Source: Phallusia mammillata
Lineage: Eukaryota
Direction of reading: 5' to 3'
NCBI GenBank assembly: GCA_965637545.1
Contig: OZ281498.1
Coordinates: forward strand, 5,952,001-6,016,000
Length of the DNA: 64,000 bases
Part shown: piece after piece, positions 12,877 to 29,600 of the stretch
Numbering within the stretch: the first letter of the stretch is position 1
Layout: each line of letters begins with the position of its first letter
Notes under the pieces: model-generated
Databases searched by the model: none
Told to the model about the DNA's origin: nothing
What the model saw: only the letters and a program-made list of their open reading frames with translations
Made by a program: the position numbers and the translations under genes

Positions 12877-23367
<10,491 letters not shown>

Positions 23368-23662
23368 GGACTATGTTACATGAAATTGGGTTGTAACTAT
23401 TCTGCTGTATCAACTTCTTTGATTATGCAATATATATGTTTTGTGCTTGTGGGGATGATAAGAAACTGTATGGTCATTTGAGAATTGGAAATGGATTTTT
23501 GCTGTACAAGGCTTCGTTATCAGCTTTAATGTTCAATAAAATTCAAACCCAAAAAGTGCGTACCATCAAATAGTCTCTGAAGTCATAAGGTTTTATTTCG
23601 TATCTGAATTAGTTTATTGGCCACTGCAAACGATAAAATCACACCACAGAAAATGAGAAACA

Positions 23663-25111
23663 TTATGGCGACATATATTTTTCATGGATAGATGCTGAGC
23701 GAAAATAGTCAAAGTCAGCTCCAACAGCCACTGACAACAACTTTTGAATGTTGCGTTCCTCAATATCCCCATAGCAATATCCATTAGCTTTGTCAACCTG
23801 CTTTAAGACAGCCAGCATACTTTCCTTTTCCTCCACATGGAGAGGTACAAATGACACCAAACTATAATCTTCAATGACACTGCACAGCTTTCTGCAATAC
23901 ATAGAAATTAGAGTTATCTCCCAGGCATGTCCAGAAATTGGGGAGTAAGATCTGTGCCCATAAATAATTTTACTCTATTAATGCCTGAAAGTCTAGTAGC
24001 CTAACCTAAAGTAGATCTCAAAGTTATTTTCTGGAGAAAAGTTTGTGTTTTAACTGGTTTTCTGTGCATGGTGTTGCCAATTTTTTTTTTTTGAAACTGT
24101 CAGAAATTTTGCCTATGCAGATATGGCAACCCTAATATAAATATATGTATGATCAATAGTTGAAAATATAATGCACATTACTCATTGAGTTTGTGATATT
24201 TTTGTGTAAATGGATCTTTATCATCAAGCTCAATCAGTTTTTCAAGGTCCAATACTTCTGTGTAATAATCTAAATGGAAGGGAAATCTGAAAAGTAACAT
24301 GCATTGTGTTCATAAAATATATTAGTGCTATGAAACCCATGTTACCTACTTTCCATACTGTTCAGCTATGTCCATTTTTGAAAGCACATTGACATGGGGC
24401 ATATGCATGTGAAGCATTGTAGAAAGTGAGGTAAGCAGAACAGATACAAATTTACTGGAGTCTGAACAATAATGTGAATCGACCAAGTGTACTGCAGTCA
24501 TGCGAATATCGCAGTCTTTGTTTGCCAGCTTTGCAATGACATTACGGAGTGAGGCATGATGAGTATAGAGTTCAACTTGACCAGGACAATCAAACACAAA
24601 GTACCTGAAAACCGTTTTGTATGTAATGCAGAAAAATTCTGGTCGATCACATATCTAATATGACTAGCTTTTTTGCAATAGTAATTTGGGAACGAACGAT
24701 AGGGTTGATATGCACAAACCACAACAAAAAAAGTAATTTGGTATGCAATTAACATCAACGAAAAATACTGTGGATGTAGCGCTAGTGTTTCACAACATAC
24801 CTGTCAGAAAACTGTGCCAGTTTCTGCAACAGCCAATCATAGTTCATTTCTAAATACTCCATGCAGTAAAGCAGTGCCCCATTAGGCCCCAGTGATAAGT
24901 TTTTCATAACATCCTCAACAGTGACCAGGTCATTAATATCAATATCACACTCATATGGAATGAAATCATTAGCAGGGTCCAAATTTACAACACAACACTC
25001 TCTTTTTACAGCTTTTAAAAACTGTTGCAATCCATGGCAGTAGGTAGTTTTCCCACTACCAGGAGGGCCAATAACAACTTGTCCAAATGCAGTTTTTTTA
25101 AATAGTGGCAT
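23663..25111 (-). CDS. GPN2: GPN-loop GTPase 2, 4 exons
   Basis: ATG at 25111. Motifs [69 protein letters not shown] and VDKANGY. Junctions are in phase. Confidence 0.97.
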
Positions 25112-25125
25112 TTTCAAATGTAAGT

Positions 25126-25709
25126 TTATCTGCCGTGAAGGATTTTTCCACGATGCTCAAAACTACAGAAAGACCATCTGTTGCCAACAGTTTCGAATGA
25201 CTTTGTTTTCATGTCAGCATTGACTTGAATGTCTTTAAATTCACCAGCGACCATAAGAATTCCACACGAGGACAGAAACAAACCCAATACAGACTGAAAC
25301 ACAATCTAAAAAAAACATTTCAATTTGAAATTATTGGCTGGTTTTTTATTTGGTTTACAGTTAAAAAAATTAAATACTGAAACAAATATGGGATGCTACA
25401 AATTTTCACAAAATATATACGCTGGTTCATTTTTTATTTCTTCATACATTTTTTATTTCTTACTGGACAGTTGTAGCATAAAAAATGTAAAGTTTGTCAT
25501 ATTACTTACATCAATTGGAAGAGAATAGAACTCTTGTTCAGTTAAGCGGACAAATGATCGATCTAAAAATCACAAAACATTTAAAAAAATCAGCAGTAGT
25601 ACATACATTTACATATTTCAATAAACTTACGCTGCGCAGCAGATATACCAGCATGGACAATGCAAGCAAGACCAACTATCAAAACAATCTTCTTAAAAGT
25701 TTGCTTCAT
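25126..25709 (-). CDS. MMGT1: ER membrane protein complex subunit 5 / membrane magnesium transporter 1, 103 aa, 3 exons (not in ORF track)
   Basis: Exons 25709-25631, 25562-25510 and 25305-25126 give [103 protein letters not shown]. This matches the EMC5 signatures AHAA.SAAQHR, LPIDIV, AGEFKD and F.HRG. Confidence 0.95.
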
Positions 25710-26462
25710 TATTTAGCTAGTTTAAAAGACATGCTACAAAAGGGGTAAAGGCGTAAAGCACAAAAGCTGCTTGAAAGTATGAACAACGCTTGTTTGGTTA
25801 CCATTTCTCTATAGCCTAAAACGAGTTGAGACACGAGAAACATAACCATTGTCCTAATTCCTAAAACGATTAAACGAAGGCGAAAAATACGATTTCGAAC
25901 ATGCACAAGTATGACGTCACAGAAGCACGGACGTGCTGTTTTAACATTTCTATAAACAATAAAATATGAATATTTTTTAACTATTAGAGAGAAGTCAGCA
26001 CATCGTTTAAATCTCTACAAAACTTGATATGTTTAGTTTTAAAAAATAGTTTACAAACAGTCCTTTAATTTTGACCAGCACCTTTGGCTTTTGACATTGT
26101 CAATACATATGTAAAAGAAACGATAAATGTCTAAAAAATGTTTAGTGAAAAATATCATTATGAATTTCTAAAAATAGTTTTATCCCACCTTGACACCATG
26201 TTGCGAAATTATGGTTTTGTAATGCGATTGCGCAAGTCAGAAAAAACGAGAAAATGTTTTGCTTTTAGGGAATTCCCCAAACAACAAAGAGCCGAAATGA
26301 ATTGTCAACAAAAGTATTTTTGAAGACAAGTATAATAGTAATTAGTAACATCTCGCTCAAAATGCGGCACGGAAAGTGATATAATGTAACAAACGGCGTG
26401 TGACTGAGTTTTTGGTGATTATTGTTGCAAGAGGTTTAGCAAAATTTCAAACTATTTTCTTG
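25710..26462. promoter_or_regulatory. Divergent promoter/5' UTR region for EMC5-GPN2 (-) and LENG9-TRPT1 (+)
   Basis: Head-to-head genes; CRE TGACGTCA at 25912-25919; a probable non-coding exon ends at 26462 (G|GTAAGT) and splices to the acceptor at 26629. Confidence 0.55.
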
Positions 26463-26630
26463 GTAAGTTTGGTAAAAATTGTAACTTTTTTAAGCACCTA
26501 AAAATATGCGGATTTTTAAAAATATTCACTTAATTGTGAATGAATGAATGAATGATACATCAAGAGACCTAAGCTGTGTTTCACAGTGTGTCATGAGTGG
26601 TAAAACATATAGTGATGTGTTTTCTGTAGT

Positions 26631-29600
26631 ATGATTTGTTTGAGTTACATTAAAAAATCTTTAAGAAAAGTTCCTATTCCCAAACTAATAAGGCCAGGTG
26701 CAGTAGTTTCAATATTTGACAAACCTCACCTCATTATGGATGAGCAAAAAGGCCAAACTTCAGACAAACCTTCAACTGCAAATACTGGAGAAGAGGCAGA
26801 AGTGCCGACCACTTCACAGAAGGAACAAAAACCTTTGCAAAAAATCAGACTTGCAGCAGTATTTGATAAACCTCCTGCTCCAGTCAAAACACCAACATGT
26901 CAGAAAAAGCCACCAATGAAAACTGCACATGATGTGATCAACAGGTTTGTAGGTTGCTATCTATATCACTGGTTCTCAAACTTTTTTTATAGTTGGGACC
27001 AAATGATAGTTTTTTAAGTGTGCAGGGAGCCGCAAAAAAGAAACCTTGATTAAATCACTAAAGATTATTATCTTTAAAGCGAAAATAGCAATCTTTGGTG
27101 GTTTTCTAAGGTTTGGTGGGAGTCGCAAAATAAGTGGTTGGGAGCCACATGCGACCATGAGACCCGCATTTGACAATCACTGATCTAAATCATTGTTATT
27201 TATGTACACTTAATGATTTTTAACAGAGTCAAGTGGGATGAATCACTTTCCCCTGATGAATTCTGCGTTGGTTATACAGATCGCTTTGATGGACTTGTTG
27301 AAAAGCCGTTTGCAGATTTAAATTGGGACATAGATATAGCTGGTGTTGGCCCAGATATTTTTTGCATTCCTCAACACAGAATTCAATACTTCAAACGGAA
27401 TGACCGAGTAGTTTGGGATAAGTCAAAACGACTGGACAATGTTTTTGGATCAACTAAAGGATGTGTTAAAATTCATGATTTAAATGGTGAAAATCATCCA
27501 GATGACCTTCAGGCAGAGTGTATTGAAAAAGAAGAGAGTTTGCAGGCTAAGAGTGAGGAATACAAGGGTCCTTCTCTCAATCCAGGTTTGTTGTGGTGTA
27601 ATGACCTTTGGTTCTTATGTTTGTTATAATTCTACTCTTAAATATTCATGTCATGCCCTCTGAATACTGAAGCATTATTGTGTTGCTGTTGTTAAAACAA
27701 ACTTTATTGCAGGCTCTTCAAGACCAAACTGTTTTATTGGTTTCCTTGTTGATGCTCTTGAAGTACGTCAGAGTGTACATGCTTATTACAGAAAAGTAAC
27801 TGAAATGGCCAACCAGGGCAATGTTGCACAGGAGGTACAGTCAGCTTTCGTGCCACTAAAGAAACTGCATGTTAGTTTTTGTGTCTGTACAGTTAACATG
27901 GAGGAGTTACAGACTGTAAAAGAGGTATGACGAATTTTGTTAATAAAATTCTGATATTCATACCAACGAATGGGTGCATTTTGTAGATAACTCAGCAAGT
28001 ATGTGAAGATGCAACCTCAATACATGTCAACTTCAGAGGTGTTGGGGAATTTGGACAGAAGGTTAAATATGCTGTGCCTGATGCCCCTGGGTTACATGCC
28101 CTTGGTACCCGTTTGCAAGAAAAATTAACTGAAGCTGGGATCAACATGCAAGGTAACTTAATATTTTGGTTTGCCAAGCACATGTAAAAATCCCCCCTTT
28201 TTTCAGGAAACTTCTCGCCATTCCAGCCCCATTTGACTTTAATAAACTTCAGAGGTTCTGCTCCAGCACCCGAAATTTCCAGGATTTTGAACAACAAAAT
28301 GTTTACAAAATGGGTTTTTAAGCATCAAGTTTTAAATAAATTTGTGATATGTGAAATAGGATCCACAGGAGCAGATGGTTTTTACAACACCTTTGCAACA
28401 TACAGACTAAAAGATACTCAGGTGTGAAAAATTGCATAGGAATAGTACTCAGAACACAATTACTAAATTTTCTTTTAATTTATATCATACATTTCTCAAT
28501 ACAATTTGCTGTATTTTGCACACTTTTGAACAAAGTGGCAAATCTGTACACATTTGTCACTTTTTAAACTGTTGATTTTATTGTTTCAGAGCCAATCTGC
28601 CAGTAGTTCGTTGCACTGGGACACACCACAAGGTATAAAAATACATAAATGACATTATTTTTTACTCTAACATTTTGGATACATACAACAGATTCAAGTT
28701 TTGAACACTTTCAACCAGTAAGGAATAAAAAACAAAAACCTCAATCAAGAAACAGGAAAAGGTACTGTAGTTAATCAATATTTTTAAAAGATGTTGTGCC
28801 AAATCTGGCTATTAGCATACTTCGTTTAATTGCTTAGTGATGGTTAATCCCTATTGTGGGCATTAAATTAGAAAATTATTTATTTTCATGATTTTTGTCC
28901 CAATTCCGTCTGCTAATTTGTTAGGCGATAAACCTCTGCACTTACTTTGTTAATTTTTTTAAAATTTCTATGCAGTAGTTGTCTATGATTAAAATACATT
29001 TTTCTAGATATCATAACAATTTGAAAAGAGATGTTGAGATTGGGAAGGCACTGGGTGCAGTACTCAGACACAACAAGTTTGGATTCAAAGTTGACTCAGG
29101 TATCATGAAGCTTTAAAGTTTTTGTGTGAATTTTATAAACATTATGTTTTTACTGTGATGTTGTGGATAGCTGTTGGCAGACACTATACTGATGCTGTAA
29201 CTGTACTACATAGTACATACCATAGTGTGCTATAACCTTTGGTACTGTGCATGACTGCATGCTATAGTGCCAATATCCAGTGGTGGGATTCAAATTTTTT
29301 TTAGCCGGTTCTGTTACAAAATCCATTCACAGTAACCAGTAATGCTAACCAGTTCACTGATCTCATAAAATTTCGTGAGACGGTTCTATAGAACTGGTGC
29401 GTACCGGCTGAATCCCACCACTGCCAAAATCTGTAGCTAGTTTTTGTGTATTTAGGAAACATATTTATATGACTAGTGATGTTAACAGGCTTCGTTTCTG
29501 CCGACTGTGATGAATAAAAATAAAAGTTGTAGAAGCAATGAGGATAGTGTCAAGGCTCAGATGATGTTGTTAGACCAATTAATTAATATAATTAAATGCA

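What the first reader, a model, noticed from the sequence alone, without database searches (positions are those of the whole stretch)
25109..25164. EMC5 stop codon is 14 nt from the GPN2 start codon with no acceptor in between: dicistronic or overlapping operon
Seen on the minus strand: ...CAC GGC AGA TAA acttacatttgaaa ATG CCA. The gap has no AG, the two frames differ, and no AATAAA/ATTAAA was seen in GPN2 exon 1. The nearest acceptor-like AGs lie inside EMC5 coding sequence (cacggcAG 25131-25130; tctttctgtAG 25164-25163). Known: ascidian operons have abutting cistrons resolved by SL trans-splicing. Inference: either a true bicistronic mRNA with reinitiation, or trans-splicing that cuts inside the EMC5 ORF and makes the two mRNAs mutually exclusive. 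An EMC5 mRNA would carry GPN2 introns downstream of its stop, an NMD-type configuration. Splicing EMC5 exon 2 to the 25130 acceptor would give an in-frame EMC5-GPN2 chimera.
Basis: partly seen in the sequence, partly recalled or inferred. Interest (0 to 1): 0.8.

Follow-up and report, generated by a model that had tools for sequence, protein, structure and literature searches.

The report
Sea-squirt EMC5-GPN2 operon, 14-base spacer
In the sea squirt Phallusia mammillata two unrelated housekeeping genes, EMC5 and GPN2, lie 14 bases apart and appear together on one spliced RNA, an arrangement at least ten other tunicates share; it is an extreme case of the known sea-squirt operon, and how the second protein gets made is still untested.

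Summary
On the minus strand EMC5 ends AGA TAA (stop 25128-25126). Fourteen bases without AG or ATG follow, then the GPN2 ATG (25111-25109) in another frame. The spliced GPN2 model is identical to the UniProt Phallusia mammillata GPN2.

What the RNA data show:
- Contig sets of four studies each hold one 1.2-1.4 kb contig running from EMC5 straight into GPN2, with every intron it covers removed.
- One contig starts with the ascidian spliced leader joined at AG 25735-25734, just upstream of EMC5.
- The only AATAAA signals lie after GPN2.
- Ten other tunicate taxa carry EMC5 and GPN2 on one contig, with spacers of 22-99 nt. One contig reads spliced leader-EMC5-GPN2-AATAAA-poly(A).
- All 547 spacer bases lack ATG (P about 0.003). 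Every taxon has an AG within 9 nt of the EMC5 stop.

So this is a deeply conserved member of the known ascidian class of operons without intercistronic DNA. I infer that EMC5 is translated from the unresolved dicistronic RNA, and that GPN2 mRNA arises by trans-splicing at AG 25131-25130, inside EMC5's last codon. Assembled contigs cannot show internal leader or poly(A) ends, so reinitiation stays open. The scan noted similar ultra-tight pairs elsewhere in this genome.

The parts
25736..25842 (-). Transcribed sequence upstream of EMC5's trans-splice acceptor (outron); the promoter lies further upstream, shared head-to-head with the plus-strand gene
   Evidence: Contigs of X12 and X8 run on to 25842 without the spliced leader.
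25734..25735 (-). Spliced-leader acceptor AG of EMC5 (ttttgtAG|catgtc)
   Evidence: The X4 contig begins with template-switch oligo plus ATTCTATTTGAATA[AG], joined at 25735 (table 7). The leader followed by GT occurs 3179 times in this genome, against 0 for the control pattern. It equals the published Ciona leader (PMC7986045).
25631..25709 (-). EMC5 exon 1 (ATG 25709-25707)
   Evidence: Joint 25562/25631 in contigs of four runs; translation.
25510..25562 (-). EMC5 exon 2
   Evidence: Joints 25305/25510 and 25562/25631.
25126..25305 (-). EMC5 exon 3 including stop TAA 25128-25126; the protein is 103 aa
   Evidence: 63-67% identical to PF10270 proteins.
25130..25131 (-). Candidate spliced-leader acceptor for GPN2 (tccttcacggcAG|ATAA), inside EMC5's last sense codon; inferred, not shown
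   Evidence: It is the last AG before the GPN2 ATG. AGs lie in an analogous position in all 11 taxa, with splice points -9 to +8 nt from the end of the stop and 8 of 11 within -4 to +1.
25112..25125 (-). 14-nt intercistronic spacer acttacatttgaaa, with no AG and no ATG
   Evidence: Spacers of 11 taxa total 547 nt with 0 ATG, against 5.5 expected from shuffles (P about 0.003).
24798..25111 (-). GPN2 exon 1 (ATG 25111-25109; the P-loop GPPGSGKT starts at residue 16)
   Evidence: PF03029 at 9e-36, with profile position 1 at residue 13; contigs run uninterrupted from 25305 to 24798.
24350..24601 (-). GPN2 exon 2
   Evidence: Joints; PF03029 at 7.5e-26.
24182..24286 (-). GPN2 exon 3
   Evidence: Joints 24286/24350 and 23891/24182.
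23663..23891 (-). GPN2 exon 4 coding part, with stop TAA 23665-23663
   Evidence: the whole 299-aa model is identical to UniProt A0A6F9DD94.
23571..23662 (-). GPN2 3' UTR with two AATAAA signals (23618-23613 and 23587-23582); these are the only canonical poly(A) signals of the unit
   Evidence: Sequence; dicistronic contigs end at 23624, 23612, 23596 and 23571.

Best explanation
This is a conserved tunicate two-gene operon, EMC5 followed by GPN2. SHOWN: one primary transcript starts upstream of 25842. It receives the ascidian spliced leader at AG 25735-25734. All five introns are removed. It persists as a dicistronic RNA that runs through the 14-nt spacer to GPN2's AATAAA sites near 23600. INFERRED: EMC5 has no poly(A) signal and no room for a 3' UTR, so its working mRNA is this unresolved dicistronic RNA, with GPN2 serving as its 3' UTR. 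GPN2 gets its own capped mRNA when the spliced leader is trans-spliced to an orphan AG at the very end of the EMC5 reading frame. The most likely site is 25131-25130, which would give an 18-nt AUG-free leader. That cut removes EMC5's stop codon. Each primary transcript can therefore yield either an EMC5 message or a GPN2 message, and the strength of this weak acceptor sets the ratio between them.
For: - Four RNA contig sets from four studies each have one contig running from EMC5 across the junction to the end of GPN2, with all five GT..AG introns represented (three of the contigs span all five); one starts with template-switch oligo plus spliced leader at 25735.
- Junction words are present in 18 runs of 5 studies.
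- The leader is the organism's own: 3179 genomic copies of leader+GT against 0 for the control. A neighbouring gene is also trans-spliced.
- There is no AATAAA or ATTAAA between EMC5 exon 3 and the end of GPN2 exon 1. Two AATAAA lie after GPN2.
- Ten further tunicate taxa carry EMC5 and GPN2 on one contig, with spacers of 22-99 nt. Their GPN2 proteins fall in a 100/100 tunicate clade that includes Styela relatives.
- L001 reads leader-EMC5-GPN2-AATAAA-poly(A). L023 and L024 also start with the leader before EMC5.
- The spacers are AUG-free: 0 ATG in 547 nt against 5.5 expected (P about 0.003), compared with 10 ATG in 750 nt of GPN2 3' UTR. This fits the whole spacer being a scanned leader.
- Every taxon has an AG within 9 nt of the EMC5 stop, mostly after a pyrimidine-rich run such as ccttatctcAG or tcctccattcgcggtAG.
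- In published Ciona operons the cistrons abut, AATAAA is usually absent, downstream genes are leader-spliced, and either/or resolution has been proposed (PMC1488885, PMC2760879).
Against: - No leader-GPN2 junction was seen in any data.
- Two scans of metagenome and metatranscriptome contigs for the leader 25-86 nt upstream of the GPN2 FGQxxIGPP motif found nothing. The same collection holds three leader-EMC5-GPN2 contigs.
- The pyrimidine tract before 25131 is modest.
- If poly(A) were added to the G of the acceptor AG, as in Ciona operons, the EMC5 RNA would lack a stop codon.
- A dicistronic EMC5 mRNA has three exon junctions far downstream of its stop. In vertebrates that would invite nonsense-mediated decay.
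- The AG-near-stop pattern is only suggestive, because TAG stops contain AG and the taxa are related.
Confidence: 0.55

Rival explanations
1. True dicistronic translation. There is no separate GPN2 mRNA. Ribosomes that finish EMC5 at TAA stay on the RNA, scan the short AUG-free spacer and reinitiate at the GPN2 AUG (termination-reinitiation).
For: The only assembled RNA form in Phallusia (4 studies) and in the nine other taxa seen as RNA contigs is dicistronic. Three contigs carry the leader at the EMC5 end and none carries it at GPN2. The spacers lack ATG in all taxa. The spacers of the window, L003 and L020/L021 contain no AG; in L004 the only AG straddles the stop and the spacer. Unchecked scan notes report other pairs in this genome 1-2 nt apart.
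Against: Reinitiation after a 103-codon ORF is normally very inefficient (established knowledge). Stop-start distance is not conserved (14-99 nt), and the spacer sequences are unrelated, unlike known coupled stop-start systems. EMC5 has several internal AUGs, so leaky scanning is excluded. The organism has a ready alternative in spliced-leader trans-splicing. Contigs cannot show internal leader tips, so their absence carries little weight.
Confidence: 0.22
2. GPN2 has its own capped transcription start inside the EMC5 gene (intron 2 or exon 3). The dicistronic RNA is then only the EMC5 message or read-through.
For: This is not excluded by contig data. In X20 the GPN2-containing contig has a higher mean word depth (78.6) than the contig of EMC5 exons 1-2 (43). 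The tool itself warns that such depths cannot rank parts of a gene.
Against: No contig starts between 25305 and 25111 except the X20 break at 25284, which abuts the EMC5 contig. A start upstream of 25176 would place upstream AUGs before GPN2. Conservation of tight linkage across 11 taxa argues for co-transcription.
Confidence: 0.08
3. The functional product is an EMC5-GPN2 fusion made by splicing EMC5 exon 2 to the 25130 acceptor, or the layout is an assembly error.
For: The joint would be in frame.
Against: No contig in four runs has that joint; only the five regular introns are seen. The public Phallusia GPN2 protein starts at the 25111 ATG. The junction is confirmed by RNA of 5 studies, and the stretch's words are held at 0.94-0.99 by the two largest runs, which look like DNA runs.
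Confidence: 0.02

Closest known systems
Ciona intestinalis operons without intercistronic DNA (Satou et al. 2006, PMC1488885; Satou et al. 2008, PMC2760879)
   Same: Same-strand housekeeping gene pair less than 100 nt apart. Polycistronic RNA is present. The same 16-nt spliced leader is used. No AATAAA lies before the upstream cistron's end. Either/or resolution was already proposed for this class.
   Different: In the Ciona cases studied, the upstream mRNA's poly(A) site and the downstream acceptor AG abut. Here the last AG before the GPN2 AUG lies inside EMC5's final sense codon. Poly(A) addition at that AG would delete the stop codon, so EMC5 has no room for a 3' UTR of its own. The spliced-leader site of GPN2 and the 3' end of EMC5 were not observed.
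Caenorhabditis elegans SL1-type operons, as discussed in PMC1488885 (its refs 42, 43)
   Same: Little or no intercistronic sequence. Upstream 3'-end formation and downstream trans-splicing compete for the same nucleotides.
   Different: According to PMC1488885, the upstream cistrons of the characterised worm cases have a canonical AATAAA; EMC5 here has none. It is a different phylum with a different leader.
Other ultra-tight gene pairs noted by this scan in the same genome (TMEM234-NR2C2AP, PET100-EXD3, TRIAP1-PIGM)
   Same: Abutting same-strand small housekeeping genes on one spliced RNA, where the usual operon cut would remove the first gene's stop. The mechanism is untested in each case.
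   Different: Their spacers are 1-2 nt, against 14 nt here. These are unchecked AI notes, and I did not verify them.
Dicistronic animal genes translated without trans-splicing (for example Drosophila stoned, mammalian SNURF-SNRPN; from general knowledge, not tested here)
   Same: A mature capped and polyadenylated RNA with two non-overlapping ORFs.
   Different: Those organisms lack spliced-leader trans-splicing. Here a leader-based route to a monocistronic GPN2 mRNA is available and is more likely.

Membership tests
Ascidian SL-resolved operon without intercistronic DNA | Same-strand neighbouring genes less than 100 bp apart (operational KH definition, PMC2760879) | tested here: met
   14 nt lie between the EMC5 stop and the GPN2 ATG.
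Ascidian SL-resolved operon without intercistronic DNA | A polycistronic transcript spans both cistrons | tested here: met
   One spliced contig across both genes in each of 4 runs from 4 studies. Junction words are present in 18 runs of 5 studies. Caveat: a contig is not proof of a single molecule.
Ascidian SL-resolved operon without intercistronic DNA | The organism has the spliced leader and uses it on this transcription unit | tested here: met
   The leader is joined at 25735 before EMC5 in X4. The genome holds 3179 copies of leader+GT.
Ascidian SL-resolved operon without intercistronic DNA | The downstream gene's mRNA 5' end is a spliced-leader acceptor at the cistron boundary | not testable with these tools
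   Only assembled contigs were available, and internal leader tips no longer than the word length are clipped during assembly. Scans for leader-GPN2 contigs in relatives found none, which is a weak negative.
Ascidian SL-resolved operon without intercistronic DNA | The upstream mRNA is polyadenylated at the G of the downstream acceptor AG | tested here: inconclusive
   No EMC5 poly(A) end was seen. By sequence, poly(A) at G 25130 would give ...GGC AGA AAA... with no stop codon, so this feature cannot hold for a functional EMC5 mRNA in this species. It could hold in L003, L001, L022 and L023, where the AG is part of a TAG stop.
Ascidian SL-resolved operon without intercistronic DNA | No canonical AATAAA upstream of the upstream cistron's end (16 of 18 Ciona operons, PMC1488885) | tested here: met
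   None between 25305 and 24798; only GATAAA at 25130.
Dicistronic mRNA with termination-reinitiation | A mature capped and polyadenylated RNA carries both ORFs | tested here: met
   L001 reads leader-EMC5-GPN2-AATAAA-poly(A) in a relative. The Phallusia X4 contig runs from the leader to within the GPN2 3' UTR. Both are assemblies, not single reads.
Dicistronic mRNA with termination-reinitiation | Fixed, very short or overlapping stop-start arrangement, with conserved upstream elements | tested here: not met
   Spacers vary from 14 to 99 nt and their sequences are unrelated across 11 taxa.
Dicistronic mRNA with termination-reinitiation | Ribosomes initiate at the second AUG on the dicistronic RNA | not testable with these tools
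   This needs ribosome profiling or reporter assays.

The most novel reading that the evidence does not exclude
In a chordate lineage, GPN2 is made from a conserved dicistronic mRNA without any message of its own, by reinitiation after the 103-codon EMC5 ORF. Together with the other 1-14 nt pairs noted in this genome, that would define a class of translationally coupled animal gene pairs hidden among trans-spliced operons.
Probability: 0.2. Interest if true: 0.75.

Novelty: new member of a known kind. Interest (0 to 1): 0.42.

Why it matters
Ascidian operons are known, but how their abutting cistrons are resolved is still unsettled (PMC1488885 calls for biochemical study).

- **A clean test case.** The upstream gene has no 3' UTR and no poly(A) signal of its own. 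The only possible acceptor for the downstream gene sits in its last codon. Two routes remain for GPN2: a trans-splice that destroys the EMC5 message, or translation from the dicistronic RNA.
- **Deep conservation.** The pair is kept together in at least 11 tunicate taxa from several deep lineages, whereas operons are reported to be poorly conserved in Oikopleura (PMC11067885). This argues that the linkage is selected.
- **A decay question.** The pair offers a natural substrate for asking whether tunicates tolerate exon junctions downstream of a stop codon.

Tried and rejected
- **Pfam on EMC5 exon 3 alone (59 aa):** no hit at E 0.01. Identity was settled instead through full-length relatives that carry PF10270.
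- **First Pfam call:** it failed on a frame slip and was corrected.
- **Search for a monocistronic leader-GPN2 RNA:** two metagenome and metatranscriptome pattern scans (leader, then 25-55 or 56-86 nt, then the GPN2 motif) found nothing. This is a weak negative only.
- **Look-ups of EMC5 and GPN2 relatives:** these returned dicistronic contigs, plus L007/L008, whose 79-99 nt 5' flank shows no EMC5 and no leader. This is unexplained; that taxon may have a longer spacer or no linkage.
- **Vertebrate hits:** P0015 (L010-L015) is a vertebrate-like GPN2 without EMC5 and was set aside.
- **X20 depth difference between the contigs:** not used, because the tool says contig depth cannot rank parts of a gene.
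- **Checking one earlier scan note (TMEM234-NR2C2AP):**
- **Papers not held:** Ganot 2004 and Matsumoto 2010.
- **The yeast reinitiation paper:** it added nothing specific.
- **Limits of the read data:** no raw-read run was offered, and the single read-laying run saw contigs only.

Full report
**Observation**

Read on the minus strand, the window shows ...CAC GGC AGA TAA, then acttacatttgaaa, then ATG CCA.
- The EMC5 stop is at 25128-25126 and the GPN2 ATG at 25111-25109.
- The 14-nt spacer has no AG and no ATG, and the two frames differ.
- No AATAAA or ATTAAA occurs from EMC5 exon 3 to the end of GPN2 exon 1. Only GATAAA at 25130 overlaps the stop.
A third, at 25157-25156, was missed.
- The exon 2 to 25129 chimera is indeed in frame.

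**Gene models and organism**

Five joints, all GT..AG on the minus strand, define the exons.
- EMC5: 25709-25631, 25562-25510 and 25305-25126.
- GPN2: 25111-24798, 24601-24350, 24286-24182 and 23891-23663.

The GPN2 exon pieces hit PF03029 (9e-36, 7.5e-26). The profile starts at residue 13, so the 25111 ATG is the only possible start before the P-loop. The spliced 299-aa model is identical to UniProt A0A6F9DD94, GPN-loop GTPase 2 of Phallusia mammillata. The 103-aa EMC5 model is 63-67% identical over its full length to four proteins carrying PF10270.

**RNA evidence in Phallusia**

- Twenty runs hold the stretch. Eighteen are transcriptome-sized and hold 0.39-0.47 of its words, which is about the exon fraction.
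- I laid four of these, from four studies. Each has a single 1.2-1.4 kb contig running from EMC5 without a break from 25305 through the stop, spacer and ATG to 24798, and on through GPN2 exons 2-4 to 23571-23624. In three runs it begins in EMC5 exon 1; in X20 it begins at 25284, and a second contig carries exons 1-2.
- The X4 contig begins with the end of a template-switch oligo (AGTACGGG) plus ATTCTATTTGAATA[AG], joined at 25735. EMC5 is therefore trans-spliced at AG 25735-25734.
- In X12 and X8 the contig instead continues into the outron, up to 25842.
- The leader equals the published Ciona leader (PMC7986045). Followed by GT, it occurs 3179 times in this genome, partly in 553-bp tandem arrays, against 0 for the control.
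- A 101-nt stretch centred on the junction has all its sampled words in 18 runs of 5 studies.
- After GPN2's stop lie two AATAAA signals (23618-23613 and 23587-23582), and the contigs end just around them.

Limits of this evidence:
- The runs are kept as assembled contigs.
- A contig across two genes does not prove one molecule.
- An internal leader or poly(A) branch shares all but at most 30 words with thousands of other RNAs, so it is clipped as a short tip.
- The contigs therefore neither show nor exclude a leader-GPN2 mRNA or a short EMC5 mRNA.

**Relatives**

Searches with EMC5 exon 3, with a relative's GPN2 and with a relative's EMC5, followed by contig look-ups, gave ten further taxa with EMC5 directly upstream of GPN2 on one contig.

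| Locus | Spacer (nt) | Note |
|---|---|---|
| L003 | 22 | Genomic; EMC5 exon 3 is 88% identical to the window |
| L001/L002 | 99 | |
| L023 | 79 | |
| L004 | 58 | |
| L005 | 60 | |
| L006 | 44 | |
| L009 | 49 | |
| L020/L021 | 33 | |
| L022 | 59 | |
| L024/L025 | 30 | |

- In a GPN2 tree all of them fall in a 100/100 tunicate clade, apart from vertebrates. L004 and L005 group with Styela clava, and three other deep groups are represented.
- L001 is a complete assembly: template-switch oligo, leader, EMC5, 99 nt, GPN2, AATAAA, poly(A). L023 and L024 also start with the leader in front of EMC5.
- No contig starts with the leader in front of GPN2. Two pattern scans of the metagenome collection for that form found none.
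- L007/L008, whose GPN2 is 91% identical to L001's, have 79-99 nt of 5' flank without EMC5.

**Patterns at the boundary**

- The eleven spacers (547 nt) contain no ATG. Shuffles give 5.5 on average, and P(0) is about 0.003. By comparison, 750 nt of GPN2 3' UTR contain 10. The whole spacer thus behaves as a scanned leader, starting at about the EMC5 stop.
- The spacers of the window, L003 and L020/L021 contain no AG. In L004 the only AG straddles the stop and the spacer.
- In every taxon an AG lies with its splice point between -9 and +8 nt from the end of the EMC5 stop. In 8 of 11 it lies between -4 and +1:
  - four TAG stops;
  - CAG|TGA in L006;
  - AG|ATAA in the window and in L005;
  - tGAG in L004.
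- The AG often follows a pyrimidine-rich run after the conserved RGK codons, for example ccttatctcAG or tcctccattcgcggtAG.
- Because TAG contains AG and the taxa are related, this is suggestive rather than proof.

**Mechanism**

Ciona operons are known to have abutting cistrons and usually no AATAAA. Their downstream genes are leader-spliced, poly(A) is added to the G of the acceptor AG, and resolution has been proposed to be either/or (PMC1488885). About 20% of Ciona genes lie in 1310 such units (PMC2760879). The present pair fits that class.

It differs in one respect. Applying the Ciona rule at AG 25131-25130 would give ...GGC AGA AAA..., an EMC5 RNA without a stop codon. The working EMC5 mRNA must therefore extend beyond the TAA, and the only poly(A) signals are those of GPN2. 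I infer two things.
- The dicistronic RNA is the EMC5 mRNA.
- GPN2 mRNA comes from trans-splicing at the AG in EMC5's last codon, giving an 18-nt AUG-free leader and destroying the EMC5 message of that molecule.

I put 0.55 on this whole statement. The part that was shown directly (one unit, leader at EMC5, spliced dicistronic RNA, deep conservation) I hold at about 0.9.

**Rivals**

- **Reinitiation on the dicistronic RNA (0.22).** It is favoured by the absence of any leader-GPN2 form and by the AUG-free spacers. It is disfavoured by the 103-codon first ORF and by the variable, unconserved spacers.
- **An internal capped start for GPN2 (0.08).**
- **A fusion product or an assembly artefact (0.02).**
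- Leaky scanning is excluded by several AUGs inside EMC5.

**Novelty**

This gene pair and its deep conservation seem undescribed. I found no paper naming it, but I searched only for operon and trans-splicing terms, not for the two gene names. The kind of system, though, is known. The scan has noted similar 1-2 nt pairs elsewhere in this genome, all unverified and all with the same open question. I therefore score it as a new member of a known kind, with moderate interest as a sharp test case for how ascidian operons are resolved.

Noticed in passing
window 26687-26692 (+), and 25843-26686: The plus-strand neighbour (noted elsewhere in the scan as a LENG9-TRPT1 fusion) is also spliced-leader trans-spliced. 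The X4 contig carries template-switch oligo plus leader joined at ctAATAAG|gcc, where the genome happens to match the last 6 leader bases. It lies head-to-head with EMC5, so at most about 845 nt hold a shared bidirectional promoter region.
   Followed up: partly
window 25732-25709 (-): EMC5's 24-nt leader after the spliced leader holds a 7-codon upstream ORF (MSFKLAK). Its TAA overlaps the EMC5 ATG by one base (TAATG). Upstream ATGs also occur in L001 and L023 but not in L024, so the feature is not conserved.
   Followed up: partly
window 21850-23573 (+) against 23571-23665 (-): The RNA polymerase II largest subunit gene (its CTD heptad-repeat ORF ends at 23367) converges tail-to-tail on GPN2. 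In X20 the two genes' contigs overlap by 3 nt (23573 against 23571). GPN-loop GTPases are known to help assemble and import RNA polymerase II (general knowledge), so the neighbourhood is a curious coincidence.
   Followed up: no
G000:C3:11108338-11147465 and elsewhere: Spliced-leader RNA genes occur as long tandem arrays with a 553-bp period. There are 3179 exact copies of leader+GT genome-wide, far more than the at most 15 copies said to be in the Ciona reference genome (PMC7986045).
   Followed up: no
L006:421-2401: In one long-branched tunicate taxon EMC5 and GPN2 are both intronless and 44 nt apart. A proteasome alpha-subunit gene follows about 170 nt downstream on the same strand, so this may be a three-gene unit.
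   Followed up: no
L007:1-99, L008:1-79: A taxon whose GPN2 is 91% identical to that of L001 has a GPN2 5' flank with no EMC5 coding sequence and no spliced leader. Either the spacer is much longer there or the linkage was lost.
   Followed up: partly
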